Numbered from the stretch's first letter, positions 1,064 through 46,100 are shown. The stretch: 48,970 nt of DNA from Perkinsus chesapeaki ATCC PRA-425 (GCA_013115145.1 JAAPAO010000236.1:1-48970); one strand, 5' to 3'. Notes: generated from the letters alone by a model not told the origin. Numbers and translations are program-made.

Positions 1064-4000
1064 CTACTGTGGGTTACCCCAACCATCAAGTTTAATAGTG
1101 TACTTTGATATCAAACTCTCGAGCTCATCGACAGAGCTCTCTAACCTTTGTCTCAACGCAATGTTACGTTTTATCTTGTCTATCAGTTGACTGCTTGTTC
1201 GTTCCATTCGAGGATCAGGATTTTTATTTAAAAACTGCAAAACTTTATCGAGGTCTTCCTCGGTGCTCATGTTCTCGCAGACAATAACCAACAATTTACA
1301 ACCTGCAATAGAAATGCCTTCACCGGGATTCGAACCTGGGTGCTGCTTACCTATGCCCATCGCTCCTGAACTCCGAAAGCGTTCCTGTATCTGCGGCCAC
1401 CAAGTGGTGAGCCAATCCCACACAACAGCCAACCCCAACGATCGATTGTGTGCGCAACTCTCAACCACACACCGCCAATCCTGCGGTCTAACCTGAGCGT
1501 CACATAACCGCCAGGCTCGGCACTCAGCTGGACCTACCACTTGCTTCGGTAATAACAACGATAATATCTGACGTTGAATCTGAACAAGATATCTTCGAAT
1601 AATAGCAGCGCGTTGCTGCTCACATCAGCATCATCAACTTCACCGATAACGGCTAGAGTCTTTTGCTGTCGGTCGATGCTCGCTGGATGCCTGTGCTCGT
1701 AATGCTCCAATAGCAGTCGAGCTCGAGCAACTCCTTTAACCGGGCAAGCCACTGCTCCGGCATACACCCAGCCATGTATATCTTCCGGAACCTGATATAC
1801 GAACTCCATTGAGAGACGTCGTAAATGCATACACTATCCGGAAGAGAGTATCCTCCTTCATCGAAGAGCCTCGAGCACGCAAGGATTGTCCCCCTATCCT
1901 GGCAATCAAGCATAATACGTAAAGATCCTCCTCGCAGGCCCTGAATGAAGACCATCACACTAACAAGCTGGCTCCTCGGGCCATACCCTCCCGGCTATGC
2001 TGTAGTTCGAATTCGACGCAACACTGCCGACCGGAGAGGAAGCTTTCCGAAGGGAGCAATGACGACCCACTAGTAGACGGCCTGATCATCGCTGTTATGG
2101 TAGGGCGAGGAGACCAGGAACTGGCTTACAGAATTTCCCGTAGGCGTCCCTGATGCGGGAGACTGGGGCCTCGTGAGTTCGAGGGAGAAGAGGAAAGATG
2201 TGGCTGAGAGAATCTGATGGAAAAACCGTTTTCCAGTTCAGCGAAGTACTCAGAGATAGATTCACTATCGATCAGGAGAATCGCACTATGCTTTCATACA
2301 ACAGCAGGAGCAGCCGATTCTGAGACGATTAACGATCGAGCTCTCCGTGGTTGGTTCGATGAATGACAATAGGCTCATGAGCTTGGTGATTAGTTTACAG
2401 CTGCCTTCTTACTTCCAAGCTGAATACCAACAGTCTCATCAATATCACCAGTCGAAAAGAGCTCAACCAACAAGCGGTACCTAAAAGAAAGCTCAGTGAG
2501 CCCGCCGCCACAGTAGCAAGTTGTCAAAAGAGAGGGAGTGGTAGTAAGTCCGACGCTCCGATTGCAAACATCGCCGTCGAGCCGCCAAACAGAGTCTCGA
2601 AGGTTATTATATAGAATATATGAGATCTTGCATCCATATATAGATAAACACCAAATGAACAGCGATGCCCAGTTTACGATGAAGTCTAGAAAATCTAAGT
2701 GCTTACCATTCATTAGGAGGCAGTCTGGCGTCACTCATCGCCATTGTTGAATCACGTACCAAACCGATAAGATCCAGTGATGTTAGGAGAGGCCTTGCAA
2801 GCTCTGTTAATCGATGCATTAGACTAGAACTATAGACAACCTGATCAGGTTAAGTTGATAGCAAACTGTGCCGCAGCAATTACAGAATAAAAACCAGTAG
2901 AGTCCGGATTAAGATGGAGAACTTCACCTTCTGCTAGAGGAATGGTAATATCACAATTTGGCATCAGTATAGTGCCTGACACACACATGTTTAAGGGAAC
3001 CACTCAGACCTTACTGCTAACAGTGTAGCTATCATTGCTTATAATACGGTAACGGAGGGGCACCTGAAGAGGAAAGGTTGACCAATGAGAGCATAGACTG
3101 CCTACGATCCATTGACGATCTGAACTGCTGCTGCTTTCCCCTACTGCTGCTTGCCGTATCTTAACCGTCTTCTCATCGGTGAGCTCGGCTATTATATAAG
3201 GGTATCTAAATACGTTATTCGGCACTTAGGCTTATTACGATTATTTTATAGCCCTAGAAAAAGGATAGAGTTCGATGGCGCTTAGCTAAGCAAGTAACCG
3301 ACCCCTTCTGAGTCGTCCACGTTTTCATCATCTCCAATATAGCTTCATCACCCAGACACGACCACAGGTCTGATGTTCGAGCCGACGAGTACCTATCACA
3401 TATCGACACGAGAGGATTTACCCATCCCACTTATGTCGATCTAAGTAGTCATGTATCCTCTCCTTGAACCGTGTCATTCCTATATGTGTCGTCAACATGT
3501 GTATCACTGCTGCTGACTTGTTATACCTAGCTTGATCATAATCGACATACTATACTTCACAGTCACTTACGAAATAGCATCGAAGTTGTCGAAAGCCTCC
3601 CGTCCATCCAAACATGTAACCTAAAAAGCAGTGTGGGTTCAAGTGACCTTCATCCGGTATACTTCAAGAAAATAGTGCCTTCGTACTACACCATTTCAAG
3701 CTCTAATTTGTGAAAACGAAATCAGTAAAAGCCTCCCCGAACAAATTTGAACTTGAAATAGTTTACAAAGGAATACGAGAAAAGACAAGGGTGCTTACTT
3801 GGATCGGATGGGAACTATCCAGGCAGTCTAACTGCATGGCGCGATCAACCATGGAGGTCTGAAATGCCGCCCAGAAACTGGAGTCAGGGAATCTGATAGT
3901 ATTGATAAAAAAACTCATCACCGAATGATGCCTAATACATGTAGCTTGCAGCTGCATATGATGTCCAGGTTGCAAATCCCTGAATAGTAGTAGCTACACG

Positions 4001-26959: not shown

Positions 26960-28794
26960 CTATGGAAAAAGATACTTCACCAACGACCGCACAAATCGAG
27001 CACTAGGGAGACAGTTTGCACAAACCATGGCGGGAAGAGTGCACAAAAGGCAATGACATCACAGAAACAGGTCCCATTAAAAATGACATGCTCATTCACC
27101 ATTTCTAGCTTCCAGAGCCGTTTGCCCATCTCTCGCCGAACGCACATATTTCTCATAAGCTTCGGTGGTTAGGAAGCGAGGATCAGCTTCGTTCAGGATA
27201 CCCAAGATACGAGCTTCCTGAATTACGTGGCGCGCAAGAATTATGGCGTCAGACTTACCAATATATGCTTCCGCCTTCCCTTTCTTGTCGCATCAAATTC
27301 AATAGCGACTCTTTTCTTTCGACCCTCTCCCACTGGATTGGCCGCTCTGAATTCACCCGGGCGATCGATGAACTCGAGATAACCTAAACATGTGATAAAA
27401 TTTAACCAAGGCAGAAGGAGCATAGAAATGATGATAAATTTCAGATTGCTGGCGGCTTTGACCAATCCACCGTGGATTTCCGTGAGACTCTGGTTACACC
27501 TCAGAGATACATAGAGGAACATCACAAGGAATGTATTCCATTTCACTTTTTGCTCTAGGAATTTACTCCCTACAAGAATCTCCGCTGCAACAAAAACACT
27601 TTTGAATCCCCCTAGAATCATCACATTTACGTTTAATGCCTCCCTCCCTCCTCCCTGTTGCCCTCACCTCTCTGCTGGGCATCATAATATCGTAAGTAAA
27701 ATGGATTCAACATTCTTGTGACAAAATAAGGTCGATCTCTGAGACACCAATACGTGCGATGATGCATCCGTGAGGGACCAATGGCTAGAATAGTCGCTTA
27801 AAGCTTGATATAACTTGTAACAGAAGACGAGCTAGTATATAATCCAGACGAAAATGTAAAACAAGAATCACTTCGCTCCGCCTACTTGTATCTCGGAACC
27901 AAGTACTCGTAAAGTATCTGCCTTGCTTCCGCAGACTTCAACATGGACTCTACAATCTGCGTGGAATATGTGGTATCTTAGGTTGAAGCATGCAAGATAC
28001 ACACTAAGTCACGTTGTTCGAGTACTCCTCCTAGCATGGAATACTATCTCCTCTGCATACTGTTGTACTTCTTTCATCCTATTCAATGGTCCTTCTATCC
28101 TCTGATAAATAATTAATTTATCCAACCAATCCTTCATCTCATGCCAATACCTAATAACAAAAACAATTTCCAACGCGCCACGAAATTATCAGAGCAAAAT
28201 CAATGCATATCACATATGCCTCCTCCCAGGAGAAAGGTCGAAACAATCAAGGACAGCATTCCAATAAGTTCAAGAAGTGATCCCTGTCGATCACTGTCGA
28301 TATTCACCTCTCCCTATTCCGGGCGGGAACCAGGAGCACGCACACACAATTTGTGCGGTAAGGGACAGCACACATTTTGTACCCTACAAACCCGATAATA
28401 ATATGAGTCGCAATCCGCTACCACAGAAAATTCCAAACATGTAGAAATCCCGAAGCTAGTAAGAGGCCTTTCTCATTCGACGACTACCAAGATAAGCATC
28501 ACCGGCGCTGGGAACGGCAAATGTGAAGTAAATTTACTCATACAACCAATCGTCCCCGTTAGATCCTCCCCCTACAGTAAGCCTGTATCATACAAAAACA
28601 CCAAGATTCGAGATACGCAACCTCCCTTTCTACACGAACGTAACCGTGGTAATACGACCAGGTAGCCTTGACATCCATTTCTACCTGAAACTCGGCCCTA
28701 TTTTCCTGAAGCCTTGCTTCTCCTTTCCATGCTTCATATGACCAAGTCGATAAAATCTCATACAGTCCCATCTGCCCTTTTTATTCCCTCTCAT
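26960..28794 (-). CDS. Hypothetical multi-exon protein with a predicted TM segment; start approximate
   Basis: Spliced segments: GSLLELIGMLSLIVSTFLLGGGI, YWHEMKDWLDKLIIYQRIEGPLNRMKEVQQYAEEIV, IVESMLKSAEARQILYEYLVPRY, EARILGILNEADPRFLTTEAYEKYVR, and ARFVRSLVKYLFP* (26960). Confidence 0.55.
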
Positions 28795-28965
28795 TGCCAA
28801 ACCACCAAAAGATAAACTATGAAAAATCTTCACAGTGCGATGTCCCACTTCCCCTCAACTCGAAAAATATCTTTAAGCTCTCGGACAATAAACTCTGTCA
28901 AGCCAAACTTTGATGATGATGTGAAATGTAAGTCGATGGTGATGGTGACATAGCCGATGGTGACA

Positions 28966-29192
28966 TTTAAAAAGATACCAAACGCACTCGAAAGATTTTA
29001 AAAAGATACCAAACGCACTCGAAAGATTTTAAAAAGATACCAAACGCACTCGAAAGATTTTAAAAAGATANNNNNNNNNNNNNNNNNNNNNNNNNNNNNN
29101 NNNNNNNNNNNNNNNNNNNNNNNNNNNNNNNNNNNNNNNNNNNNNNNNNNNNNNNNNNNNNNNNNNNNTACCAAACGCACTCGAAAGATTTT
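28966..29192. repeat. 31-bp minisatellite (AAAAAGATACCAAACGCACTCGAAAGATTTT) spanning an assembly gap (N 29071-29168)
   Basis: More than 3 identical copies lie left of the gap and the same unit resumes right of it. True copy number is unknown. Confidence 0.95.
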
Positions 29193-29351
29193 GGTATGTT
29201 TCAACGCAATACAACCCTGGTTTGTTATGAAACGCGATATTGCTGCCTGGTATTATTTCTCTCCGTCACTCGCCACAAAACTAGTCCAGCTACAACAGTA
29301 TAGGCGCGCTTCCTTAAAGATGTTCGAAAAAAGATATTTTTTTGTTGTTGC

Positions 29352-32300
29352 TCAGAAAAGATGCTTCTTCTCCACAACCTGTAACTGTCGCCACACATAC
29401 AGTCCTCCAACCACAACAACTATGATACCTGATACAGCAGCGTTGAGGAAATGCAAGATTGCAAGATTCTTTATAAACAGGGTCTACTAGTATGACGCTC
29501 AAATTCAATAAAGATTTCCCCCCAGCATCAAAAACGCAGGAGTTATGCTCATAAGTCCACCCCTAGCAACACCATGGAAGTGCACCCTACTTGATCGAAG
29601 GCACCTTGGATGCGAAAATAAGTCAATAATAATTGGTATAATACTATCCTGAATAGGGTAGCAACTTGCTCATCTTTAAACGTCATAAAATAATTGTTTA
29701 TAGTCCCTCAAATCTCGTTGATGAATAAATCCCTTCCTTCAACTTACAAAGTATAAAAAGCTTATTGGCCAAACTATGGGAACTATTGATCGAGTCCTCC
29801 AAGTCATCAGCATTGAAAAGTGGCCTGCTTACAAAAACGTCAAACATGAATCGCTTCGATCCGCTAAGCTCACCCTTCCCCTCCAGCGTTCACTGATGTG
29901 AGCTGCTCTCTAACCTTCTCTACACGGTCCTGAAACCGATAATTTCGTGGCGCGCGGTCATGGAGCCATGATTACCTTGTGATCTCCAGACTCTCTTGTT
30001 AACATCTCTCGTAAACCGACCATTTGATTCTTCAACGTATCAAGTCCACCCGAACCTGAAAGATTCATTGCCGAAATTCTTCACAGTGCGCAGCAGCGTA
30101 AAGATACCATCGCTCGTCGCCTTTATCTCCTTCCTCAGCTGCTTCATTCGAGATTCCAAATCAACAACTTGGTGAGTGATCTGACCTAACATCAACCAAA
30201 TATACCCAATTTCCTGGCGCGCGAGAATTCTACCCAGCTGGGAATGCATCTTAAACAGCTCTGGTTGAGTTGTCTCAATATAATTAACCAATAACTGTGA
30301 TACCTTCTGTAGCGTTAGTGTTTGCAGAGCTGCGTCATCGCCAACATCGGTTGTCAGTAACTAAATTCATCATGCTCAAACTTAACCATCAAGATTCATC
30401 CTAAGATACAATAAGCCTCTCCAAATGAGTCATTGTAGGAAAATTACCAGCGCCGTTTCAAATTCGTCAATCTTTTCCCCCGAAAACGCCCTACATGTCC
30501 TTAGCGGAACTACACTCATAATCTAGTTTATAATACATCTCATAATATTAGAAATATAATATTTCTATCAATCTGTTTGGGTTGATGGTAGCAAGTTGAA
30601 CTACTACGCCAGTGTCTACTAGAATAAAAGTGCATCAGTAGTTAGCACTACATTAATGACATATTCACACCACACCAGTAAAAAGCAGCCAATGACGTTG
30701 CCGTATGTCATCATACCAACAGTAAAATTATCTATATAATAATACTACTAATACTTCCCTATAATAACATGTCCATGAATGTCGGACTATTGCGCCCCGC
30801 TGAGGTGTCGTCGCAATACCCTTGCAACGTCAACACGCAATACAGTGAATACACGACAATAAAGTATAAACTGTCCCCAATTATAAATAAAGATACAATT
30901 CCTTAGTTATCATAATTTATTTTTAGTTTATAATTAGCGTAATATTTCCCCTTCAACTACCTCCTTCCAATCTATCTTTCCACCATCTGACAGCTCATTA
31001 ACAACTTCATTAACCAAAGCCTCTCCCGGTTTCGACATATCCATATTGTAACTGAGAGCTGTAATTTCGTGGCGCTGCTAGAATACCATCCCACACTTGG
31101 GCGATGAAACCGCAAATCTAATACCCTTCGAGGTTGATGAGAGGTGAATCCACAAATTATCGGGATAAATTACCATTAAAGAAGCCTTTATAACTACTAC
31201 AAACCTTACATCTACCTAGTCCCAATTTTGCACTAAATCGCCAACAACTCCGCCACCAAATTTAAGTCCATTCCCGTCAACCGTATGAACTCGCCCTTAT
31301 CTTCAATTGAGTACTTCAGAAGTTAAGTTCCTTCTAGAAAGTCAAAAAGATTTTCCGAATTAATGTCGAGAGCTTTCAGACTTCCTTACTGCCAGCCAGT
31401 TGTTATAATTAATACCAAATTTCCTACAACTTACACATGCATGTCGATGATAGATACCTTCTCAGTAGGTAAAGATTCGCCACTCCACGAGGTAAAGCCA
31501 ATATATCCACTATTCCTGATTAGATGGGAATATGGTATAAAAATACTACTGATGTTCCTACGGGACGCTAACACCGCCCGCTGAGGTGAGCTCCTGCCAA
31601 TGCCTGCTGCCATCACGATATCGAACCATGATCGTGTCAGGGCGCACACGAATTCCAACCTGGATCAACTTATTGTGTATCCTGCAGGGTTGAAGCTAAG
31701 ATATTACCCTAACATGATCGCCTCCATGAAGATTAACTCTAGATGATGCCCCTCTGTCAGGAACATCACGATCGAAAGACAAAGCACGATCGTTACGATT
31801 GGTAACGATAGAAACTAAGGAAGACCGGGGAAGTTGAATCGACTTCCGACGAATCTTAGCTCGATTGATGCACCAACCACTTACCTGTGTAATCATCACC
31901 CGACGCTCCTTTCGGCGTAAAAACGATACCAAATCCATCGAAACGCGACTAGGTAGGAGAGCGTATCTTTAGGTTGGATTGAGTTTAAATGAAGATACCT
32001 TTTGTCCGAGTATGTTATAGTCGAGAGCGTTGAATGCTGTCCTCCAGTCTTTCTTGTTTTCACCTTTCTGAAGCTCGTCACGAATCTTGGAGAATTCTGA
32101 AGTGTAGTTCATCGTGGTAAACCTGTGAGGAGCATTTGGAGTAACATGATAGGTCGAGCACTTACCACAAGGCAAATCCAGAATCCCGGCTAGCTGAGGG
32201 ACCATCAGTAACCTGAATACAGAGGTATTTTGTATCTTGCATGGTTGAAGCTAAGATACCGAAAGATCGAAGAGTATTTCGAAATCGTTGGTCTCAACAG

Positions 32301-32655: not shown

Positions 32656-33050
32656 GGAGTATCCAAGGTCGAAGCTTGCTAGATACACAATTAGGTCAGC
32701 TTCTATACCACCACACATGCGGCCTCCACCGACACATCTAGCGCATCGCTCCGCCTTTTTCACTTCTGCACGCCAAATCATGTCGAAGTCTACATAGATC
32801 TCGCTCGCCATTCCGATCGATTACTGCTTAGCGAGTACTCAATGGCCTTTGGACCCTCTAGTCGAGCAGGTGATGGGCAAGTGGCGTCATTGGCGTGTTT
32901 AATATTAATATTATTGTACTCTTTGAGGGGTCTGGGCGTCACTTAGAGCCATATTTTGTTATATAATCTTTTAGCCGATGGTTTAGGTCGGATTGAGCAC
33001 TTGTGTATGATAATCGATTATAGGTAGTTGTTGCCGAATCCTTTCTATTA
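32656..33050. promoter_or_regulatory. Divergent strand-switch interval between minus-strand and plus-strand gene blocks (putative bidirectional promoter)
   Basis: All orientable genes to the left are minus strand and all to the right (to 46.1 kb) are plus strand. The G/T-rich versus C/A-rich intron skew flips here. Promoter function is inference. Confidence 0.55.
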
Positions 33051-33284: not shown

Positions 33285-33379
33285 AGTGATGACAACTAAT
33301 CATTGACAACTACTACTTGATGGCTCTCTTGCCTTATTATCGTGTTTGTTAAATTGGGGGAAGGAGCGGTATGAGATAA

Positions 33380-35653
33380 TGACAACAGCAGCAGTTTACA
33401 GTTCCGCTGTCTCGTGTCCAAATAGCATCAGATAGCAGCCCAAAGGGCTCTGCTGGAGGCGGGGAGCTGGATGGTGAATTTGATATGGATTGTGATGGTG
33501 TGGATATGCGGTATAGAAACCCGTTCCGATCATCAGATCCTTCCAGAGCATGGAAGTAGGCGTATCTTTAGGTTGAGCGTGCATCTTGCATTCAGTCGTA
33601 TGGAATCGGTCGATTCTTGTCATGGTGAAGTAGTGATCACCGATGACAGTTCGCCGAATCGGGTGGCGCAAAATGCCGAGGAGTATTTCGCTGGGAGAGG
33701 GAAAGGAAAACGACGAAGTCGGAGCGGCAGCGGTGTAATGCTGTCAACGTGTCCATCTGAAGTGCTAGACGAGATGTCGTCTCCGGGAATCGAACCTGCG
33801 CCACCATCGAACTCCTCTCCTGCTACTCCGGCGCCGACAGTATTGGACCCTCAGGTGGGCTGATTGGCTGTAGTAGCGATTAGTAGGTTTTTCAGAGTGT
33901 TGTTACTAGCGAACCGCCGTCGTTATCTAAAGGAAGCCAATGGATTGGTGAGCAGCAGCCTCCTGGGCGTTCATTCCCCAATGATTCCTCTGTGCAGCGA
34001 TGACTCCTCCAGCAGTGTCGAGTGCTCCACGGGTTATGTTTAAACCATTTGTGATGGGGGATGCCTCGACAGAGAGCTCTCCAGCTCAGGTAGGATGGAT
34101 CAGGTTTAAGAAGAGGGCTTGCTATGTGGGTGATGCTATTAGCCGGACATGCTTGATTATAGTGGAAGGTTAGAAGCTGCCATGGCCGGGCAGCAGGCTG
34201 GGATGGGGAGGAGGGGTAATACAGTGGTGTGTCTGGTGTGTCTGGTGATGGTGGTGAATAGGTGGATTGGTTAGAGGTAGATCTATATTGGAAAGGTTTA
34301 CTCTTATAGAGGAAAGTGAAGAAGATGGATGTGATGAGGAGGATGAAGGTAAATGAGGAGGGAGTGGACACATTATTGGATACCGTAATAGTACCTAATA
34401 TAGATTACTCGGTAGTAGTATTATATAACGTTATGGTACCTAATATAGATTACTCGGTAGTAGTATTATATAACGTTATGGTACCTAATATAGATTACTC
34501 TGTAGTAGNNNNNNNNNNNNNNNNNNNNNNNNNNNNNNNNNNNNNNNNNNNNNNNNNNNNNNNNNNNNNNNNNNNNNNNNNNNNNNNNNNNNNNNNNNNN
34601 NNNNNTAGTATTATATAACGTTATGGTACCTAATAAAGATTAGTCTGTAGTAGTATTATAGAACGTTATGGTACCTAATATAGATTAAGTAATGAGTCTA
34701 ATTACTAGTAGTTATTAATAGACTGAGTAGATTAGCATATTGAACAAGTAATATATCTACGGTTAACCAACTGCTAAACTTAGGATGCAGTATGAGTATC
34801 GGGGACGCACTGCTGTGAAATAGCCCTATGGCCATGAAGGCTTTGTTAGTCTCCTCTATCAAACTGGGGGCTGTGATAGGGTTGAGTATGTATTTGATAA
34901 ATTGTCCATTGCATCTTCGTAATGACGGGCGGTGTTTACTGTGATTACTTGAAAATGTTCCTCATCAAATTCATGGGACGATTCTTCATAGGTCTCAGAT
35001 TTTCACTTTAACAAAATTTATAAATTATGTTTTGAGCGTAGTGTTAAGGATGATGGTGCGTTGTGAATCCACCACGCTAGCTTGGAATCTGAATTCACTT
35101 ACATACATCATCGGGTTGGCAACCATTTGTTATTCCTTAGTCAATGTTCATCCAGACTCGGTACAGCCAGGAGGAGTGGGACAATCGGGAGGCTCTCAGG
35201 TAGGTATTGGAGGGATCAATCTTGCAATCTTGCATTTTCTCAACGTGACCATATGGTCTGTGTATGTCTGCTAGCTCATCGCTGTGTGCTTAGCCGTCGG
35301 GAATCGATGCGTTGGCGAGGCTCCAAATGAGTATGATGAATCAACAGAGAAAGAAGAAAGAGAAAGGTATTAAATATCGGGTGCCGGGATCGAACCTAAG
35401 ACCTCCGCTGTTAGGTCGGGTGTATTCCCATCGTTCCATATTGGAACGGCTTAATTTGCTTGAGGAAAGTGACGGTGATGATGATGATAGTGAAGAGCGC
35501 TCCTTGGAGGCTCTGTCGACAAGCAGTCCTTCGCCGGACATGTCGACTTCGTCAGCTGAGGAATCATCAAGTCTTGAAGAGGATCATCGCGAAACGGTAG
35601 TGGGGCTGGTGCTGGCTGGAGGGGAAGGCAAAGATCGTTCTGTTGGAGGTTAA
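33380..35653 (+). CDS. Hypothetical low-complexity (Ser/Pro/acidic) multi-exon protein, interrupted by a minisatellite and gap; may be two genes
   Basis: Plus-strand GT-AG junctions link DEMSSPGIEPAPPSNSSPATPAPTVLDPQ|SVVTSEPPSLSKGSQW, MTPPAVSSAPRVMFKPF and QQRKKKEKG|RVYSHRSILERLNLLEESDGDDDDSEERS...GG*. Confidence 0.45.
34384..34687. repeat. 45-bp minisatellite (TACTCGGTAGTAGTATTATATAACGTTATGGTACCTAATATAGAT) spanning an assembly gap (N 34509-34605)
   Basis: About 3 copies left of the gap and 2 degenerate copies right of it. Each unit holds the palindromes ATAACGTTAT and GGTACC. Confidence 0.95.
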
Positions 35654-35949
35654 AATATCTATCTCACTTCTGAGCTCTGAATCTCTCGCTTGCCTGTTGG
35701 TTACTCTACATCTTCTATGTTATCCTTTATTAACTTTCTTCTTCGTATTGGTGGGGGCCCAACTGGCAATATTTCCCAAGTATTGTGTCCGCGGAGTTGA
35801 TTGTCCGAAAGTTTAAAAGTTACAAGTTGCTCAGATAAGCGGCACCAGTGGTGAATTATATGACCGGTTGTTGTCCCCTGGGATAATGTAACCTTCAAAT
35901 AATTGTTCATGATGTTACTAGGTGATGATGTTGAAGCATTTTGTTATTC

Positions 35950-37703: not shown

Positions 37704-37866
37704 TCACCCTTCACTTGCCTTTCCATTGTATTACTCACGTAGTAGTAGGTGTATATTAGTCGACAATCCTTTTGCAACATTCAAAGTGTGTACTTGGAAA
37801 TAAGGAAAGAGGAGGTCCTGAGTTTGATAATTAATCGGATGTGGGGGAGGGTGATAGGTTCTTGGA

Positions 37867-38564
37867 ATGATCTCGAATCGTATTGCACCTCTGTGCCGCC
37901 GTGCCTTGGCAGCCGTTAACAGTAGCAGTAGCACAGTTGCTCGAGGGTTGGCTGGACGAGCGTTCTTTTCCTCTGAAGGGTAAGTGTGGATGTTAGTGGA
38001 TCAACTGTGATAAGGTTTGTAAGGGGATCAAAGCCGAGCGAGGTGGATATAGCAGCACGAACGGTAGAGGCCATTAAGGAATATTTGCAAATGCGTCGAG
38101 AGGAGGTATTAGTAGCGCACGCCCTGGTGATCGACTTGTTTCCGCTCGAAATGGACAGGTGGCTGTGGAGCACGAAGCGGAGAAGGGTGGTGCGGCGGCC
38201 AGGACAGTGGCGGAGGAAGCACTGAAAAGATTGGATGAAAATATCGTCACTTTCGGCACGAAAACTGCGGATGAATTGGTAAGTGTTTTGTAATTGTAGT
38301 TGTAGTGGATGGATGGTTGTTGACTTGTTGTTGCAGTTATCGTTGAGCTTTGAGTCACTTGGTTTTGATGGACTAGAGGAGGTCGAATGTCTGCTGCAGA
38401 TAGAGGAAGCATTTGATGTGAAGTTGCCGGATGAAGCGTTTAATAAGTTGAAGTGTGGTCAGGAGGTGAGGTGGTGGGATGGGGGATGGGGGAGAGGGAA
38501 GGAGTTTGTGTAGGCGATGGAGGCTGTGAAACAGCAGTTGAAAGAACAAGCAAAGGAAGAGTAA
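37867..38564 (+). CDS. Mitochondrial acyl-carrier-protein-like protein with the phosphopantetheine Ser replaced by Gly
   Basis: Arg/Ser-rich transit-like N-terminus MISNRIAPLCRRALAAVNSSSSTVARGLAGRAFFSSE, and ACP fold signature SFESLGFDGLEEVECLLQIEEAFDVKLPDEAFNKLKCGQE|AMEAVK. DGL (38367-38375) sits at the DSL position. Confidence 0.8.
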
Positions 38565-38696
38565 TGGAAAATTTTTGTTTCGGGAGATTTTAATGGGTGG
38601 TTGTTGAGTTATGGATGGTCTAGAGGGGGAGCGGCGGTTTGCTTAGTGAAGGGTCCAGGTTCTATTCTTGGTGGAGGTATTTTTGAGCTTTGTAGA

Positions 38697-40092
38697 ATGT
38701 CCTCCTCTTCGACTCATATCCGTCCAAGCAGTGCTGCCTCGCCGTCCCTTCGTCTTTCTGGTCTTGGGGAAGTCACGCAACTCACCACCATGTCCCAGGT
38801 AGATACTATTGAAAGGAAGGCATCTGTCCTCCTCCGAGGAGTATCGGACACCTAGCCTCATAGAAGAGCGTTCCTAATTCGAAAGAGGACATATCTGCCT
38901 CCTTCTTTCTGGGCTTTCGAGCATCCGATGCTACTCTACGATTCCATGCTTTTCTTGTCAGGTTCGAACTTCCCCTAAATGGTCCTTCACCGGTCGAACC
39001 AGTAGTCTGTCAGCCAGAGGGAATATGGTCCCTGGTCCTGGTGAGGGGAGTGTTGCTCTGCGTTGCTGCTGCCGCAGCTGCTGAGTTATCAGGCCAATAT
39101 CGTGTATCGAGATTGGGTGATATTGGTGGAGGGCCGTCCTTTAGATTTGGAACAGGCAGCCGAGATGGGGTAGTGGTGATGATAGTAATAGTAGGCATGT
39201 ATGGTTTAGGGTGATAGAGGTAGAAGCCGGTATGGCAGTCCAGGGCCGGGAGCATACAATCCTAGACCAGCTAGTAGTACTGCTACGATAGGCTTTGGCA
39301 GCGGAAGGTAGTGGGTGGGGGGCTACTGGCTTGGGAGTGGCAGAGATACTTGGCGGCAGCCTGTCGGTGTAGGACGAGTGCTGGACGATGGTAAAATGTA
39401 GAAGTGCCCTCCAATTTCTCTGGAAACATAATACTAAAGTGGTTGAGGGTCATCATCAGCTTCATTTTATTCAGACCAGACGGAGCGATGCGGAGGTCTT
39501 CAACACCTGGTCCTGGACATTACGCTCCAGGTGGTAGTATGGGTAAGTCGGGGAGGATGTACAGTATGGCATCGAGGCCTACTAGGGGTGGAGGTAAGGA
39601 CTACTACTGCTGCTGCGGGAGGGAAGACTCCTGCTGCCTTCAGTGCCTTCGGATGCTGCATGGATGCCTGGTCCTGGACAGTACAGGGTTACTGGACCCT
39701 CGCCGGTGTATGGCAGAGGGCCACAGTGGTCATTTGGTTCATCGTGTCGTGCTAAGGAGGGGTAGGTAGGGGTGGGGGGGTTGCTGGAGGGTTATTGTAT
39801 TATTTAGTCGGAAGGATGACTCTGGCCCTGGACCAGGGGCATATGCTGAACATGGTCGTATAGGAGAGAATGCACGAAAGTAGGGGCGTGAGTTCGATTC
39901 CTGGGCCGGACATCCTCAATTTAGATGCGGATTTGGTCGTCCCCGTCCACAGTCAGCTTCCCTGCATGGTCGGACAGCCTCTGAAGGTAGCATCAAGGAC
40001 TACTCTCTCCTCCTCCTTCTCCTTCTATGTCTTCCCTTTGCTCAGATTCCATCGGTCTTGGCGGTATAGTTTACAGTGGCTTTGGCTATTAG
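38697..40092 (+). CDS. STPG/SHIPPO (ODF3-like) PGPGxY-repeat protein, likely flagellar
   Basis: Repeated units GSPGPGAYNP, STPGPGHYAPGGSMGKSGRMYSM, PGPGQY...GPQWSFGS and SGPGPGAYAEHGRIGENARK|CGFG, plus TSPKWSFTGR. Confidence 0.85.
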
Positions 40093-40191
40093 TGCTTATC
40101 ATGCTGCTATCATCAGTTGTCCAATGCTCTCTAAGATTTGTGTTATTGATAGTAGTCATCATTACAACAATAACAGTGAAGTCTGGAGAGG

Positions 40192-43100
40192 ATGGATGAG
40201 CTACGTCTGACAGCCCAGGATGCATTAAAGGGCCTCACTACACTTGAAAGCGCGTGCATCGAGGCACCTGGTCAGGGCGGCCATTGGGTAGGTTAGTGAA
40301 ACCTTGTCATTTGAGGAGACACAACTATCAGTTGTGTCGAACACGGTTTACCCACAAAGAGCTGGAGAGTGCCTTATCGGTGTTTTTGCGCTTGTTGCTG
40401 GTGGAGATTGACACGTCGAGTGAGCTTGAGGTAATGTGGTGTTGGTGGGTGTTGGCAGGGGTTGTTGGTCAGAAGCCATTTCGGCGAGTGAAGGGCCTCG
40501 TCGATCGACACTTGGCTGTCAGTTTGTGCCCGGATTGTGTGGATGCATTTGTTACAGCCTCGCGTCAAATGACGAGGTAATAGAGAGGATGATTCGGGGG
40601 AAATGTGGTATGAATTCGTGCTGGTAAGGTTCCTGCAGGCCAACTTCGAGCAGGATACGGTTGAAGAGGCAATGAAGGCAGTCTATTATCCCTATCATGA
40701 CACCAGACTGCATGCGTCCTTTCGAGGGCCTCCAGTAGCGCGAGCGATAGGTCTGATGCAGTGGTGGGGTGGGCTGCCAACGACTGTTGGAACGGAGGAG
40801 TTTGAAGGGCAAAGCTCCCCCAGTGAGTTTTTGGATTGTCTGCATTTTGCCTCTTGGATGGTACACGACAAACTGATGGAAAAGGAGGAAAATGATGATT
40901 GGGTGGTCGAGACGGTCTGCGCGTCGCTCCGTCGGATACGAGTCACGAACTCGGAAGTTTGGATCGCTGCTGATAGCCCTTGGACGCGGTGGGCTGGCCC
41001 ACTTGAGGAACGCTTGGAGGTGTCGTCACGCGCCAGGAAAATAAGAGCAGCCCTTCTGGAGGCCTCCGCAGCGGCTTGTTGTTGTTGTTCTTCCTCGGAG
41101 GGTTGGTGGTTCCCTCGTGGCCTGTGGGACAGGATGGCCGGTCGCGGCGAACCATGTGTGATATCGATCGCTGGTGCAGTGGCGACTTCTGGCTTCAATA
41201 CTTCCTCTCTAGAGGAGGGTGTGGCTAAGGCAGTGGAAACGTTGAAGGATGAGGACTTACCTGTTCTAAAGGACACTTGTTTTTCCTTGGCCGCAGTACC
41301 GTCTCTAACATCGGTTGTCAACACTCGGCTTGGTGGGGCTCATGGAGAGAAGGAGGGGCTAAGGGAGGTAGTAGGTGAGGAGGGTTAATGGTTGAGTAGA
41401 GTGCTGGCTTCAGATGTTTGCTGGGGACTCTCGAGCAGTGGAGGGTTTATCGCTGTGGTGCCAACAACAGACTTTGGCGGTCGGTGTGGAAAATGTAATA
41501 AGCGGGGAAGATGCTGGGATGAGTGGTTGGATAGGTGACGGAGCATGCTTGGGAAGTGATGGCGAAGTGCGCACTACCAGCTGCACTGCAGTTCATGGCT
41601 TCCATACCAGTCTTGAAGGTAAGCAACGTCCAAGCTCAGTTGGTTAGGCTTCGTGTTTATTATTCTTAAGGTCGTGGGTTCTATATCTCCTATAGGTATT
41701 TCTTCGATCTGTTGGTTCACTCGCTGTTGAAGTATTAGAGCGTCGAGGCGGTGCCGCCAATTCATCCTCAACAGAGGTGCTCCCCGGCCCTCTACAGTTC
41801 GTCGTAGCGCTTGTCGATACAGTAAGCCATATCCCTCTCTCAATAGTACTTATTTGGTAGTTGACGAGCTGCCCGAAGGCCTCGTTGTCGTATAACCTCT
41901 TCGATGTCTCAACCCTCCACACTGCGCTGGCCGACTGGGTCTTTGAGAACGTTCCAGCGGATTGGTCGGGTCATAGAACGACTACCTCGAAGCCGGAGGT
42001 CAGATTAATATTTCGTGGCGCGTGACTATTTAAACTGCTTCAGACTGTATGTTACACGGCGATGACCGATGCTCTTGCCACGTTGGAAAAGAGGATGCAC
42101 GGTGATGAGTGGCGGCGGCTACCCTCCACCACCCCCGCCGGTGGCAAGAAACCTCCGGGAGCGGCGTCACCGAGTGATGAGGAAATAGCCTCGAATTCAT
42201 TACGTAGGAGATGCCTCGTCTTCTTCTTCTTGTTGTTTGTCCCTTTTATGGTGGTCTTTAGCATCGTTACCTTCTTCACCTGATGATTGGGATAACTACA
42301 CTCCTAGTCGACCAACTGTTGGGGTATTGTCGGTGTCAAGTAGTAGTGATGACAATGACGATAAAACGGAAGAGTTGCAAGAACAGCAAGAAGAGGATAA
42401 GGTGAGGAATTTGCCACACACTGGGATACGGTTCACGCCGAATCACAGCTCACTAGCAGGCCTATCTAAGTTGCAACTGCTGGTAGTTCTTCGGTATTTC
42501 ATTAAATCACCGCTGATTGATGGACGTTCGAATGGATCTTCATTTGGCGTATCAGGGCCAGTTGCATCTTTTAGCCCCGAGAAGTGCCGAAGGACATCAA
42601 ACGAGGGAGCCAAGCGTTAAAGGCAATCGCTGGAGCATTGGATCGCGGGACAACAGCAGCAGCAGCACCTCCGACGTACCGTGCCTTTGCCAACAAGCGC
42701 GCAGAAGTGGCCGGCGGCAAACCAGTTCAATCAAAAATAGATTCCTTCTTGAAACCGAGTGGCGGAGGAGGGACGGTCCCGGCATCCTCCTGGCACTCAA
42801 CTTCCCATAGTTCTCGAGTCGAGCGAGCGTTCGCGCATGTCTGGGACAAATTGGGGACAACTAAAAGTACAGCGATGAGTGACGGAGCGAAAAGGAAAGT
42901 CGCTCCCGGTCCCCCGCCGCCCCCACTGCCTTCCAAACCTCGACCGGTGGCTAGGCTTGCTGCAAGCCCGAAACGGGCGACGAGTGGTATTGCGATACCT
43001 ACGGGATCGGCGGCAATGGCCAAGGCTGATGCGCATGGGAAGCCTCCACCGATGTTCGAGAGCAAAACCAAGCCTAGGAAAATGAAAATGGAAAGGACTA

Positions 43101-46100
43101 AGATAAGACTGACACAAGGATCGGGGATGGCGCGCCATGAGAGGGACGCTAAAAAGGGAAATATTGAGTGAGATGATTCACGTCATCACATGAGGTTGGT
43201 TAAGTTGGTATCTTTAGGGTTGAACGAGAGCATGCTGTCGATGATCTACATAGGGTTTTACTGTGTCGTGATCCATTCTCCACCGACTCAAAGGAGTCTG
43301 ACATCTTGCCCTTGGAACCTCATCAAAGGAATAATGGCAACTGCGAGTCGTTCTCGTCAGCTGATGAGTAAGGGACCTGTCGGGATCGATCTTGGGGGTG
43401 AATTTGTCGGAGAACAGATATGTGAAGTGGTTCCGTCCAGCACTCCTATTCGAGGCAGCTGAAGGGCTTCGTCGATCCCTCTCGACTACCGAGGGAAGCA
43501 GTGTCTACTGGGGCATACCATCGCTCAAAATTAGTCGATCGAGCCGCAAAGGAAAGTGGGCAACGTAAGCCGCATCATCGGAAATTATTATTACTTGTGG
43601 TTTTCAGGCTCACAGTGAAGTCTCAGATTGATGAGAGTTCTGGTAGGGAGACGATTGCTGGGGCACGCCCGCAGCAGAAGTCGGGGAGGCGAGTCGAGGC
43701 CCTAAGCCAAGGAGATCTGGTAAGCAGCTAACCGTTTCGCATAGGAATTTGTTTGAGTCCCCTCACGTACGGTACGCGGCTTATTGACAAATGCGCGGCC
43801 TGGACGGGCAAATATATCGATGAGTAACGCGAATTTCATGCTAAGTTCTTTCCATTAAATTCTACATACTCGATTACCGACGAGATTTCCCCGCTCTAAC
43901 TGTTAGTGCGGGGGAAGCTCGACTCGGGTTAGAGTCTAACTCGACAAAAGGATTTCTACCCATTTTTCGCACTCTTGAGTGGCGAGACTAAGTGTAAAAG
44001 CTCAGGGCTTCCGTATCCGTCAGGCTTAGGACCTTACACCGTTGTTTTGGTTCCCTGTATCATTCAGGTGTTGCTCGTGCGCTCTGAAGTAGCCGACTCA
44101 CCTTCCTTAGTCTATGATCAACTACTCAATGGTGTACCACTAACCCATCTCAGCCCCACTGTCCGTCAAGGCACATCTATAGCCTTTGGTTTGGTCTTTA
44201 AGGATGATGCTGATAGACGCGGGAATGAGGATGAAGGCGGCGGGCGAGGTGGCAAGTTCAGAAGTGCACGAATTAAAATACCCTTCGAATCGGATGAGGT
44301 ATCTTAATCAACAGTTACCATCTCCAATTGATCCATTCAGGCCCCCTATGGTTTATCTCCTCAATCACCATGGGCAGTGGATTCCTTTTGTCAGGCTGTC
44401 GTCCTTGGCAGCGCCACTACACCGGAAAGAGAGTGTGAGGGCTTGGACTGGATCCTTACTAACAGCACTTTTTCACCTCTGCGAGATCTCCTCATTTCGC
44501 CATCTGTGCCAGTACTGAGGCCCTCTGTTGGTCAAGAAGTTGCGGTGGGTGACTTGAATGCAGCGCAGGCCAGAGCTGTCAGGAGTGCAGCAGATATCTC
44601 CTCGCCGATCACACTAGTGCAGGGCCCTCCAGGAACGGGCAAGACCAAGACCATTGTGGGCATGGTCAAGGCGTTGCTTGAGAAATCAATCAAGCTAGTG
44701 ATTTGCGCGCCATCAAATGCGGCAGTTGACGAATTGGCGTCGAGAATCCTTCATAGTTCGCTTCCTCCTGATAAAGATCCGCCTGGGACGTACAGTGTTG
44801 TAAGGGTCGGATCATATAGGCGAATTACTCGTGACGAGGTGAGGGCGGTTTCGGTGGAGGAGCTGGCGAAGGCTGGTGGGCGGGACAAAGCAGTGGAGTT
44901 GAAGGACTCTCATCGAGAGAAAAGGGCTGCAATTCTAATGGAGATAAGAAAGTTAGATGAAAATATAAGAGAGCTCTCTGGCGATAACGACGCAGAAGTC
45001 CGGGAAGATCGGGGTAGACTCATTGCGAGGAAGAAGGAATTGAAGGAGCAGTTGGATAAGCTGAAGGAGCGATCTTCGCGAGCTCTCTCTCGATCGCGGG
45101 ATGAAGCCTTGAAGCATCTGCTCGGCCAAGCAAAAGTGGTTCTCGGTACACTGAGTTCCTTTGGTAGCTCCGCCATTGTAAGCAATTTCATGGCGCGCGA
45201 AGCCACGTGTATAATCGACGAGGCATGTCAAGCTATCGAGCCTTCTGCCTTGATACCATTGAAGCTTCGAGGTGTTAAGCGGCTAATAATGGTCGGCGAT
45301 CCACAACAGTTACCAGCCACAGTGATGTCAGCGGAGGCGAAGGCGTTGCGATACGAACGATCGCTCTTTGAGAGGTTGGTGAGCGCTGGTTGGCAAGCTC
45401 ATCTGCTGGACGAGCAATACCGGATGTTACCGGAAATTGCCGACTTTGCATCGAAGGAGTTTTACGAAGGGCGGCTCAGGACAGCTCCGACGTGCCGGTT
45501 CCCTTCCTCCTTTGGTGTCCCACTGCGACCGCTTCTTTTCCTTGACGCTCGATTTGGTGGAGAGGAACGAGCTCGTGGTGGAACGTCATTAGTAAACATC
45601 CAAGAAGCTGGTATAGTTAATAAGCTAATTGATAGCATGAGAAGTAGGAAGAAGATGTCTATAGGAGTTGTGACACCATACAGGCAGCAGGCAATGCTTA
45701 TTAGGAATATGGTCTCTAATGGAGCAGATCTTGTTGATACTGTTGATGCTTATCAAGGCCAAGAAAAAGATATAATTATAATGTCGTGCGTGCGCAGCAG
45801 TCGCGATGGTGGCATAGGTTTTGTGGCGGATTATCGGAGGCTGAATGTCTCTTTGACTCGTGCTAAATACGCGTTGTGGATCGTTGGTAACGCAGAGAGC
45901 CTCGGGCGATCATCAAAGGTTTGGGCGGATCTCATACAACACTGCAAAGACGTCGGAGCCCTAGTGGATGCTCGAAGACTGGACAAAAGGACTCGCTATA
46001 CGGCGAGTGAAGAACGCCCTCTCGCGGAGATTCTCGAGCTGTGTAACACCACAAATACTGTCCAGTCCCCCCAACTGATGACTGACAATAAGAGAATGCG

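What the first reader, a model, noticed from the sequence alone, without database searches (positions are those of the whole stretch)
1303..43235. Candidate system: short introns of unrelated genes built from a shared kit of 11-28 nt cassettes
Reading introns by eye, roughly 25 of the ~40-60 nt introns carry one of five recurring motifs, each detailed in its own finding below. They occur across most genes in the window, including the aminopeptidase, the membrane paralogs, the lectin, the STPG gene and SEN1. Three of the five families occur both sense and antisense to the intron, and in one family the motif edge is the GT donor. Orientation independence argues against pure RNA splicing signals. 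It fits either (a) relics of very small introner/MITE-like elements that created these introns or (b) DNA-level protein-binding sites parked in introns. Introners are established in other protists and fungi. Elements or signals this small, several co-existing in one genome, are not something I can assign to a described family; novelty is unverified.
Basis: partly seen in the sequence, partly recalled or inferred. Interest (0 to 1): 0.9.

Follow-up and report, generated by a model that had tools for sequence, protein, structure and literature searches.

The report
Conserved short motifs filling Perkinsus introns
The tiny introns and gene spacers of this Perkinsus genome carry at least five families of 12-40-letter motifs that have survived at matching places in related species while everything around them changed, so they are working signals (most likely protein docking sites) rather than debris of intron-making jumping elements.

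Summary
The window is Perkinsus-type DNA: spliced-leader ends are seen on the RNA, and 23 introns, mostly 43-70 nt, are verified by RNA. I found five motif families.

- A: AATTTCGTGGCGCGTGA(C).
- B: GGCGGAGCGAAGC, with a T-rich tail.
- C: a fixed 38-40 nt element, GACCTATTnT-GTATCTTGCA-n-AACCTAAGATAC.
- D: tRNA-type B-box relics.
- E: GTGAnTTGnnGGAAAtnTGGTAT.

31 of 118 short introns carry one of these, against 3.9 in shuffled introns. Among RNA-verified introns the figure is 17 of 23.

Orthologous loci from P. marinus and from a third lineage keep the same intron positions. Silent sites there are near saturation (33-44% identity) and intron sequence is otherwise random. Even so, blocks of 9-17 nt from A, B, C, D and E survive.

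The motifs are not confined to introns. They also lie in spacers and next to trans-splice acceptors, and one exact copy of A lies in a coding exon.

There are no terminal repeats or target duplications at intron ends, and no RNA-structure covariation for the "hairpin".

A, C, D and E occur in both orientations. B is always in sense.

Verdict: these are selected cis-elements, probably mostly read as DNA. The introner reading is not supported, but how new copies arise is unresolved.

Earlier notes of this scan record families A, C and D on other pieces of this genome.

The parts
25980..25996 (-). Family A motif (AATTTCGTGGCGCGTGA) in RNA-verified intron 25960-26009, sense
   Evidence: A 16-nt block is kept in the orthologous intron of L003 (5634-5679) and lost in P. 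marinus L002.
42009..42025 (+). Family A motif in predicted intron 41999-42043 of the SEN1-region gene, sense
   Evidence: A 17-nt exact block is kept in the orthologous intron L001 8085-8130 while the rest of the intron differs.
29941..29957 (+). Family A motif, antisense, in RNA-verified lectin intron 29930-29975
   Evidence: Not present in the orthologous introns of L002 or L003.
31063..31079 (+). Family A motif, antisense, at the 3' end of the RNA-verified 383-nt lectin intron 31052-31434
20236..20334 (-). Two family A copies (20236-20252 and 20318-20334) plus a weaker inverted copy at 20356-20366. They lie in a cluster with B (20451-20484) and an antisense tRNA relic (20575-20600).
28171..28187 (-). 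Family A motif near the 3' end of the RNA-verified 534-nt intron 28151-28684
29266..29282 (-). Family A variant (TTTTGTGGCGAGTGAC) in the spacer after the lectin stop codon. It is orthologous to an exact A copy in P. marinus (L002 5290) and a variant in L003, each preceded by a B core.
25263..25279 (-). Family A variant immediately upstream of the spliced-leader acceptor at 25256
27221..27237 (+). Family A variant (antisense) in predicted intron 27218-27258
   Evidence: Absent from the L003 orthologue.
30203..30224 (.). Overlapping A variant (antisense) and E-like motif in RNA-verified intron 30186-30233
26296..26329 (-). Family B (GGCGGAGCGAAGC plus CGATTCATGTTT..TTTT tail) in RNA-verified intron 26289-26339
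   Evidence: The 11-12 nt core is kept in orthologous introns of L002 (7966-8033) and L003 (5272-5340).
29832..29865 (-). Family B in RNA-verified lectin intron 29825-29873
   Evidence: Orthologous copies are L002 4947 and L003 2843, including the tail.
20451..20484 (-). Family B, long form
27849..27882 (-). Family B copy in the gene downstream of the lectin gene (orthologous to L003 4084)
23079..23091 (-). Family B core only
32222..32259 (+). Family C 38-nt element, antisense to the lectin gene. Its far end supplies the GTATCTT donor of RNA-verified intron 32213-32259.
   Evidence: Kept in P. marinus (L002 2034) and L003 (898).
31667..31704 (+). Family C element, antisense, in RNA-verified intron 31660-31707
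   Evidence: Kept in L003 (1637).
31949..31998 (-). RNA-verified intron starting with GTATCTT, with the complementary AAGATAC 29 nt downstream (C-related dyad)
   Evidence: z -4.2
27973..28010 (-). Family C element, sense. Its CTAAG|ATAC end is the 3' splice site of RNA-verified intron 27977-28025.
   Evidence: Partly kept in L003 3917-3988.
26102..26139 (-). Family C element, sense, in RNA-verified intron 26099-26146
   Evidence: Kept in L003 5483-5544, absent in P. marinus.
24925..24962 (-). Family C element in intron 24920-24968 of the paralogous membrane-protein gene
   Evidence: Kept in L003 6917-6987.
32659..32696 (-). Family C-like element in the outron of the lectin gene. It holds the spliced-leader acceptor near 32680 and is conserved in L002 and L003.
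30056..30107 (-). RNA-verified intron whose donor is GTATCTT. It also carries CGCACTGTGAAGAATTT (family F).
43168..43235 (+). Predicted intron ending GTATCTTTAG, followed by GGTTGAAC in the exon (C-related). The 3' end is similar in L001 9111-9157.
1303..1350 (-). Family D: in-frame, stop-free intron of the M1 aminopeptidase gene made largely of a tRNA 3' end with an intact B box (GGTTCGAATCC)
35367..35414 (+). Family D: intron with an antisense B box. A 12-nt block is kept in L001 2105-2162.
39880..39924 (+). Family D: intron with a sense B-box relic. The orthologue L001 about 5890-5939 keeps it.
41619..41670 (+). Intron with a tRNA 5'-type A-box/D-loop string (GCTCAGTTGGTTAG). Not kept in L001.
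25812..25838 (-). Family E (donor-proximal GT..GGAAATATGGTA) in RNA-verified intron 25789-25838
   Evidence: A variant form is kept in L002 8497 and L003 5801.
31516..31540 (+). Family E, antisense, at the 3' end of RNA-verified intron 31516-31561
   Evidence: Antisense copies are kept in L002 3302-3365 and L003 1747-1802.
40597..40615 (+). Family E in predicted intron 40577-40628. A 12-nt block is kept in L001 6616-6668.
19110..19134 (-). Family E at the 5' end of predicted intron 19096-19134
31410..31434 (-). Family E at the 5' end of the RNA-verified 383-nt intron 31052-31434
24741..24777 (-). Predicted 37-nt intron beginning with family E. The orthologue is at L003 7143.
26635..26892 (-). 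25-nt tandem array (10 copies), each unit with GTATCTT, ending at the spliced-leader acceptor 26629

Best explanation
The non-coding DNA of this Perkinsus gene cluster carries a small vocabulary of sequence-specific cis-elements held by purifying selection. Here that DNA is mostly ~48-nt introns plus very short spacers.

**The families**
- A: 14-17 bp, CpG-rich.
- C: a fixed-length 38-40 bp element with GTATCTT/AAGATAC ends.
- D: the tRNA-type B box.
- E: about 25 bp.
- B: a 13-nt core.

**How they are probably read**
- A, C, D and E are most likely read on double-stranded DNA by docking proteins. For D that would be TFIIIC. For the others the factors are unknown and probably act in transcription or chromatin organisation of these densely packed, trans-spliced genes.
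- B is read in a strand-dependent way, either in the primary transcript or as a directional promoter-type element.

**Why the motifs touch splice sites**
The introns are barely longer than the elements, so elements abut or overlap splice sites. GTATCTT serves as a donor, CTAAG|ATAC as an acceptor, and the GTGA of E as a donor.

**Shown:** the motifs exist, are enriched, are spliced out normally, are conserved beyond neutral expectation, occur outside introns, and have the orientations stated.

**Inferred:** that proteins bind them, which proteins, and what binding achieves.
For: 1. Neutral sites are near saturation. Four-fold site identity is 0.33-0.44 between the window and the relatives. The longest common word between orthologous introns is 4-6 nt, the same as for non-orthologous pairs (mean 5.0-5.1, 95th percentile 7). 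Motif introns keep much longer words: 17 and 16 nt (A), 12 and 11 (B), 12 (D), 12 (E), 10 and 9 (C).
2. Intron positions are shared in all three lineages.
3. The motifs are not restricted to introns.
   - A B-then-A pair follows the lectin stop codon in three lineages.
   - A lies directly upstream of the SL acceptor at 25256.
   - A C-like element holds the lectin SL acceptor and is conserved.
   - An exact 18-nt A sits in the SEN1 coding exon of L001, where the window has a near-match.
4. A, C, D and E occur in both orientations, and the orientation is kept in orthologues.
5. The C 'hairpin' shows no structural selection. Only 2 of 8 introns fold better than shuffles. The consensus fold is -0.76 kcal/mol with no real covariation, although the primary sequence is conserved over 38 nt in 13 copies.
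6. All 16 exact B cores in three lineages are in sense.
7. RNA contigs show that the motif-bearing introns are removed as ordinary GT..AG introns.
Against: - No binding or functional data exist, and the factors are unknown.
- Only about 40 kb of orthologous DNA and a handful of independent loci per family were compared. Genome-wide counts could not be made.
- For A, the three copies conserved across lineages are all in sense. The four antisense copies are window-specific. This weakens 'orientation-free'.
- E is mostly in sense, 8-13 nt after the donor. B is strictly sense. RNA-level roles therefore remain plausible for these families.
- Exact 15-17 nt copies that appear only in this genome's version of an old intron are hard to get by point mutation and hint at a copying process.
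- Depletion in exons is expected for any non-coding signal, so it says little.
Confidence: 0.5

Rival explanations
1. The motifs are RNA-level signals of these very short introns and outrons. They would be intronic splicing enhancers, branch-site or splice-site extensions, or a hairpin that presents splice sites, read on the pre-mRNA.
For: - B is sense in 16 of 16 exact cores.
- E starts 8-13 nt after the donor in 8 of 11 sense copies, and its first letters are the donor.
- Sense copies of A end 7-23 nt before the acceptor, with GTGAC as a possible branch site, including at a trans-splice acceptor.
- C supplies donors and an acceptor.
- The A copies conserved across lineages are all in sense.
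Against: - A, D and E also occur antisense. The antisense copies of E and C are conserved in that orientation in two or three lineages.
- C shows no covariation, and most copies do not fold better than shuffles.
- Six of 23 verified introns splice without any motif.
- An exact A copy sits in a coding exon.
Confidence: 0.22
2. The motifs are cores of very small mobile or copied cassettes (introner/MITE-like elements, or patches copied during break repair). They seeded or re-seeded introns, and only some were later kept.
For: - Three or four window introns of unrelated genes share about 35 nt of B plus its tail. They are more alike to each other than to their own orthologues.
- The window's E copies share a species-specific form.
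- Window-only A copies of 15-17 nt lie in introns whose orthologues lack them.
- C has a fixed length with inverted ends.
- Element edges coincide with splice sites.
Against: - Intron positions are shared by three lineages.
- There are no inverted repeats between intron ends and no direct repeats beyond the AG|GT consensus.
- The motif position inside the intron varies.
- Many copies are older than the deepest split sampled, and only the core is kept. That needs selection whatever the origin.
- Copies also lie in spacers and in an exon.
- With the inferred tree (window,(P. marinus, third lineage)), a window-only copy is as well explained by one loss as by one gain.
Confidence: 0.15
3. All families, not only D, are worn-down pieces of tRNA or other RNA polymerase III genes. 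A would be a 5' acceptor plus A-box piece, and C an acceptor-stem plus T-arm minihelix.
For: - D is plainly tRNA-derived.
- Some A variants read TGGCGCAG(T/C)G(A/G), which fits the A-box consensus TRGCNNAGTGG known from tRNA genes (20322, 25267, 17175).
- The centre of C resembles a B box with a base missing.
- The B tail ends in a T run.
Against: - The majority form of A lacks the invariant A14.
- The C stem and loop sizes do not fit a T arm.
- Rfam finds only the true tRNA-Gly gene, and nothing in a B intron.
- ARAGORN finds no tRNA in these elements.
- The resemblances are partly from memory of consensus sequences.
Confidence: 0.08
4. The pattern is chance plus paralogy: a reader's eye grouping unrelated short strings, helped by duplicated genes.
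For: Two C introns (26099-26146 and 24920-24968) are paralogous. The family patterns were defined on the same data they were counted on.
Against: - The unbiased 12-mer sharing test gives 14 pairs against 0.74 expected.
- The motifs recur in other lineages at non-orthologous places.
- Cross-species conservation holds.
Confidence: 0.02

Closest known systems
Introner elements (repeated introns of Micromonas, Aureococcus and dinoflagellates; Amoebophrya introners, PMC7789003)
   Same: Introns of unrelated genes share sequence. Some elements carry splice sites at their edge. Some have inverted ends. The host is an alveolate relative.
   Different: Amoebophrya introners have 8-20 nt inverted repeats pairing the two intron ends, 3-5 nt direct repeats across the boundaries, and are strain-specific. 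In this window:
- there are no end-to-end inverted repeats or boundary repeats;
- intron positions are shared across lineages;
- only cores are alike;
- the cores also lie outside introns.
Extra-TFIIIC (ETC) sites / stand-alone B boxes (yeast and human; from general knowledge)
   Same: Family D is a B box without a working tRNA. It is orientation-free, conserved, and lies in Pol II genes.
   Different: The location inside tiny spliceosomal introns is unusual. Families A, B, C and E do not match the B box. Occupancy is untested.
Phylogenetic footprints / conserved non-coding regulatory elements in introns and promoters
   Same: Short blocks are conserved at orthologous non-coding positions against a saturated background. 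Sites turn over between lineages. Occurrence is both intronic and intergenic.
   Different: The elements are long (14-40 bp) relative to their 45-50 nt host introns and overlap splice sites. Several families together occupy most introns of a gene cluster. One family is strictly strand-specific.
CGCG-type cell-cycle elements (E2F TTTSSCGC; yeast MCB ACGCGT and SCB CACGAAA; from memory)
   Same: The reverse strand of family A reads ACGCG-CCACGAAA. It contains both an MCB-like and an SCB-like string and an E2F-like TGGCGC.
   Different: This is a resemblance of strings only. The conserved unit is 14-17 bp and asymmetric. No factor has been tested.

Membership tests
Introner / MITE-type repeated introns | Intron ends carry terminal inverted repeats and target-site-like direct repeats across the exon/intron boundaries | tested here: not met
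   In 23 RNA-verified introns, boundary direct repeats are at most 3+3 nt (the AG|GT consensus). The first 10 nt versus the reverse complement of the last 10 nt match at 1-4 positions.
Introner / MITE-type repeated introns | Copies are similar over the whole intron and many are near-identical | tested here: not met
   Similarity is limited to cores of 12-40 nt. The nearest case is B, with about 35 nt shared by 3-4 introns.
Introner / MITE-type repeated introns | Lineage-specific intron gain: the intron is absent at that position in relatives | tested here: not met
   Motif-bearing introns have positional orthologues in L001, L002 and L003.
TFIIIC B-box / ETC-type sites | Match to the B-box consensus GGTTCGANNCC | tested here: met
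   Met for family D only: 1326-1336, 35386-35396, 39891-39901 and others. Not met by A, B, C or E.
TFIIIC B-box / ETC-type sites | Occupancy by TFIIIC without Pol III transcription | not testable with these tools
   No ChIP or accessibility data are available.
Conserved non-coding cis-regulatory elements | Conservation at orthologous positions above the neutral level | tested here: met
   Four-fold site identity is 0.33-0.44. Motif blocks of 9-17 nt compare with a background longest common word of mean 5 and 95th percentile 7.
Conserved non-coding cis-regulatory elements | Function independent of orientation and of intron context | tested here: inconclusive
   Both orientations are seen for A, C, D and E, and copies occur in spacers and an exon. 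B is sense-only, and the conserved A copies are all in sense.
Conserved non-coding cis-regulatory elements | Bound by a sequence-specific protein | not testable with these tools
   Needs pull-down, DAP-seq or footprinting.
Structured intronic RNA element (hairpin) | Stable fold supported by compensatory changes | tested here: not met
   z-scores are -4.3 and -4.2 in two introns and -0.9 to +1.3 in six. RNAalifold gives -0.76 kcal/mol, with one doubtful compensatory pair.
Known RNA families (Rfam 15) | Covariance-model match | tested here: not met
   Only tRNA-Gly at 22775-22845 matches. Nothing matches at the motifs even at E up to 10.

The most novel reading that the evidence does not exclude
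Perkinsus keeps thousands of ~48-nt introns because they are the housing for a genome-wide, multi-family code of DNA docking sites. That code would include TFIIIC B boxes and at least three further factors' sites. New copies would be written into introns and spacers by a short-patch copying process, and the sites would co-evolve with their factors. The co-evolution is suggested by species-specific variants appearing in parallel at orthologous introns.
Probability: 0.2. Interest if true: 0.85.

Novelty: new variant of a known kind. Interest (0 to 1): 0.65.

Why it matters
Gene regulation in Perkinsus and its dinoflagellate relatives is poorly understood. The genes are trans-spliced and tightly packed, and no promoter or regulatory motif is described for them in the literature I could search.

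This finding gives a short list of exact, conserved elements that can go straight into pull-down and reporter experiments in the transfectable P. marinus. If they are docking sites, they would be the first regulatory vocabulary for this parasite group. They would also offer a reason why so many tiny introns are retained.

The strictly sense-oriented B element and the splice-site-overlapping C and E elements also bear on how very short introns are defined.

Tried and rejected
1. Rfam on the whole window and on a B intron found only tRNA-Gly, with no U2, U6 or other hit. From memory I had noted similarities of B to the U6 3' end and to the complement of the U2 5' end, and of C to U2. I dropped these as unsupported.
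2. The RNA hairpin reading of C was rejected on folding and covariation.
3. Two protein searches with exons from 24.7-27.6 kb found nothing, and Pfam on exons of that region found nothing. The orthologous loci came instead from the SEN1 exon and a 46-aa lectin exon.
4. My own gene finder over-split long introns and merged genes. For example, RNA shows that 31052-31434 is a single intron and 29825-29873 is an intron. Counts that rest on predicted introns are therefore approximate, and 10.3-15.7 kb and 21.3-24.7 kb remain unannotated.
5. Exact motif strings searched in the paper library returned only unrelated primer hits.
6. The idea that A and B form a fixed promoter module was not pursued, because spacing and order vary.
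7. The identity of the factor for A (E2F/MCB/SCB-like strings) rests on memory only.

Full report
**What the window is**

The window is eukaryotic and intron-dense, with GC about 0.38-0.52. RNA contigs laid on 24.9-30.9 kb and 30.9-36.9 kb end in loose letters that read CCGTAGCCATCTGGCTCA..CATCTTGGCTCA or ..CATTTTGGCTCA. This is the perkinsid/dinoflagellate spliced leader. These ends place trans-splice acceptors at 25256, 26629, 28818 and 32680 on the minus strand and at 33022/33026 on the plus strand. Earlier notes of this scan name the genome Perkinsus chesapeaki. My own support for the genus is twofold: the spliced leader, and collinear orthology to P. marinus GG681723.1.

The same contigs verify 23 GT..AG introns. 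Twenty-one of them are 43-70 nt long, and two are long (383 and 534 nt).

I wrote a simple gene finder, trained on the window, to list further introns. It recovers most verified introns but also makes errors, so counts based on it are approximate.

Recognisable genes in the window:
- an M1 aminopeptidase;
- two paralogous membrane-protein genes;
- an L-type lectin;
- a dual-specificity phosphatase;
- a SEN1-type helicase.

Yes.

- Without any prior motif definition, 14 pairs of short introns share an exact 12-mer in either orientation. Dinucleotide shuffles give 0.74 +/- 0.87 pairs.
- After removing low-complexity words, 13 pairs remain. Non-overlapping exon fragments of the same size give 0.97 +/- 0.96.
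- Clustering of the shared words, reading of contexts and alignment gave five families.

The families are:
- **A:** (T)AATTTCGTGGCGCGTGA(C). There are seven exact 11-mer cores and about eight variants.
- **B:** (R)GCGGAGCGAAG(C). In this genome it is followed by GATTCATGTTT and a T run.
- **C:** a fixed-length element, GACCTATTnT GTATCTTGCA nnGTTnAACC TAAGATAC. Its ends, GTATCTT and AAGATAC, are inverted repeats.
- **D:** tRNA 3' relics with an intact B box, plus one A-box/D-loop relic.
- **E:** GTGAnTTGnnGGAAAtnTGGTATnA.

With simple patterns for these families, 31 of 118 short introns are hit. Shuffles give 3.9 +/- 1.9. This count is descriptive, because the patterns come from the same data. 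Among RNA-verified introns, 17 of 23 are hit. The motifs are concentrated at 24.7-32.3 kb.

GTATCTT is the donor itself in verified introns 30056-30107, 31949-31998 and 32213-32259. CTAAG|ATAC is the acceptor of 27977-28025.

The two assembly gaps lie inside a 31-nt and a 45-nt tandem array in spacers. The array units continue on both sides of each gap, and no motif-bearing intron is affected.

**Related sequences**

- The 576-aa SEN1 exon found a 73%-identical open reading frame on a 12-kb contig, L001.
- A 46-aa lectin exon found three relatives. These are P. marinus GG681723.1 (L002) and two contigs from one sequencing run (L003, L004).
- L001 and L004 are 96-97% identical to L002, so they represent a P. 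marinus-like genome. L003 is a third lineage.
- The loci are collinear with window 33.2-46.1 kb (L001), 33.1-20.8 kb (L002) and 32.5-23.4 kb (L003).
- Four-fold degenerate sites are 33-44% identical between the window and the others, and 61% identical between L002 and L003. The window is therefore the outgroup of the three, and its silent sites are close to saturation.

**Conservation**

Intron positions are shared. Intron sequence is otherwise unalignable. The longest common word between orthologous introns is 4-6 nt, as for non-orthologous pairs (mean 5.0-5.1, 95th percentile 7). The motif introns stand out.

| Family | Window intron | Orthologue | Block kept |
|---|---|---|---|
| A | 41999-42043 | L001 | 17 nt |
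| A | 25960-26009 | L003 | 16 nt |
| B | 26289-26339 | L002 / L003 | 12 / 11 nt |
| D | 35367-35414 | L001 | 12 nt |
| E | 40577-40628 | L001 | 12 nt |
| C | two C introns | L003 | 10 and 9 nt |

By alignment:
- C is kept at five orthologous places in L003 and at two in P. marinus.
- E is kept, as a variant form, in both other lineages. This includes the antisense copy at 31516-31561.
- The second B intron (29825-29873) is kept in all three lineages together with its tail.

There is also turnover:
- A at 29930, 30186 and 27218 is found only in the window.
- A at 25960 and most C copies are missing in P. marinus.

**Not an intron-only phenomenon**

- After the lectin stop codon, a B core followed about 45 nt later by an A motif is present in P. 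marinus and in L003. In the window it is present in degenerate form.
- An A variant lies directly upstream of the acceptor at 25256.
- A C-like element contains the lectin gene's spliced-leader acceptor and is conserved in all three lineages.
- Tandem arrays upstream of the acceptors at 26629 and 28818 are built of units containing GTATCTT.
- An exact 18-nt A motif lies inside the SEN1 coding exon of L001, read as N-F-V-A-R-D. The window has N-F-M-A-R-E there, with two or three mismatches.

**Orientation and structure**

- A, C, D and E occur in both orientations relative to the host gene.
- All 16 exact B cores in the three lineages are in sense.
- E is mostly in sense, starting 8-13 nt after the donor.
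- The A copies conserved across lineages are all in sense.
- The C 'hairpin' is not supported as RNA structure. Only two of eight introns fold better than shuffles. The consensus fold is -0.76 kcal/mol without meaningful covariation, while the primary sequence is conserved over 38 columns in 13 copies.
- Verified introns show no inverted repeats between their ends and no boundary direct repeats beyond AG|GT.
- Rfam and ARAGORN recognise only the true tRNA-Gly gene.

**Interpretation**

The data show selected cis-elements, not insertion debris. Four lines of evidence point to recognition as double-stranded DNA by sequence-specific factors for A, C, D and E:
- orientation freedom;
- occurrence in spacers and in an exon;
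- conservation of sequence rather than of pairing;
- the presence of a bona fide B-box family.

The introns serve as the available non-coding space in a compact, trans-spliced genome.

B, and possibly E and sense A, may be read on the transcript or may act directionally.

Origin is a separate question. Two observations suggest either co-evolution with a trans factor or some copying of short patches. First, the window's B and E copies resemble each other more than their orthologues. Second, there are window-only exact A copies. With the tree (window,(P. marinus, third lineage)), gain and loss cannot be told apart here.

**Comparison with known systems**

- Introners, as described for Amoebophrya (PMC7789003), are defined by end-to-end inverted repeats, boundary direct repeats and strain specificity. 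All three features were tested here and not met.
- Family D matches stand-alone B-box (ETC-type) sites by sequence. Occupancy is untested.
- The set as a whole behaves like phylogenetic footprints. It is unusual in three ways: element length relative to intron length, overlap with splice sites, and the share of introns occupied.
- I found no description of these motifs for Perkinsus in the searchable literature.
- Earlier notes of this scan record the tRNA-relic family on many other pieces of this genome. They also record the A motif and the 28-40 bp GTATCTT element on other pieces. The families are therefore genome-wide. Those notes were leads, not evidence.

**Limits**

- Only about 40 kb of orthologous DNA was compared, with few independent loci per family.
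- The gene models are partly my own predictions.
- No genome-wide scan was possible.
- There are no binding or functional data.
- Resemblances to E2F/MCB/SCB strings, to A boxes and to snRNAs are from memory and are not claimed.

Noticed in passing
window 25256, 26629, 28818, 32680 (minus strand); 33022-33026 (plus strand): Spliced-leader trans-splice acceptor sites are seen as loose ends of RNA contigs, with at least three leader variants (CATCTGG, CATCTTGG, CATTTTGG). 32681-33021 is a divergent spacer between the lectin gene and a very highly covered plus-strand gene.
   Followed up: partly
window 30056-30107 and 28824-28839; L003 2543-2598 and 2679-2776; L002 4561-4877: A sixth motif, CGCACWGTGAAGAWTT, lies in a lectin intron and again about 20 nt upstream of the trans-splice acceptor 28818. 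In the relatives, inverted copies sit in the two introns flanking an 80-nt exon. Pairing of those copies could promote exon skipping or circularisation.
   Followed up: no
window 26635-26892 and 28966-29070 (+ gap 29071-29168): Tandem arrays of 25-nt and 31-nt units, each containing GTATCTT, lie immediately upstream of two trans-splice acceptors. The last unit of the first array supplies the acceptor.
   Followed up: partly
L001/L004 versus L003 (all from run SRR12548988): One sequencing run holds two diverged versions of the same loci. One is 96-97% identical to P. marinus ATCC 50983. The other is only about 74% identical in exons. This indicates a mixed sample or a hybrid genome.
   Followed up: partly
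window 1303-1350: An intron of the M1 aminopeptidase gene is in frame and free of stop codons, and consists largely of a tRNA 3' end. The Pfam ERAP1_C match spans it as an insertion of about 16 residues.
   Followed up: partly
window 33786-33796; L001 1035-1045; L002 44-54: An intact B box (antisense) lies in what looks like a coding exon of the plus-strand gene, read as ..PGIEPA... It is conserved with about 60 nt of flank between the P. marinus-like contigs. It may be an unrecognised in-frame intron.
   Followed up: no
window 29353-29433: The last lectin exon (transmembrane tail) is 100% identical in protein to P. marinus. It is preceded by a conserved intron end with two ATCTTGCA strings. 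A long intron (about 29434-29697) separates it from the rest of the gene.
   Followed up: partly
window 22775-22845; L002 10061-10133: An intact tRNA-Gly(GCC) gene lies at a syntenic position in both genomes.
   Followed up: no
window 25643-25695: A verified intron without any of the five families carries a GCGCATGCGC palindrome.
   Followed up: no
window 25812-25838, 31516-31540 and orthologues in L002/L003: Family E has a window-specific form (GGAAATATGGTAT) and a form shared by the other two lineages (GAAAGGnGTGGTATGAG) at the same orthologous introns. This is a parallel shift, as expected if the sites follow a changing trans factor.
   Followed up: partly
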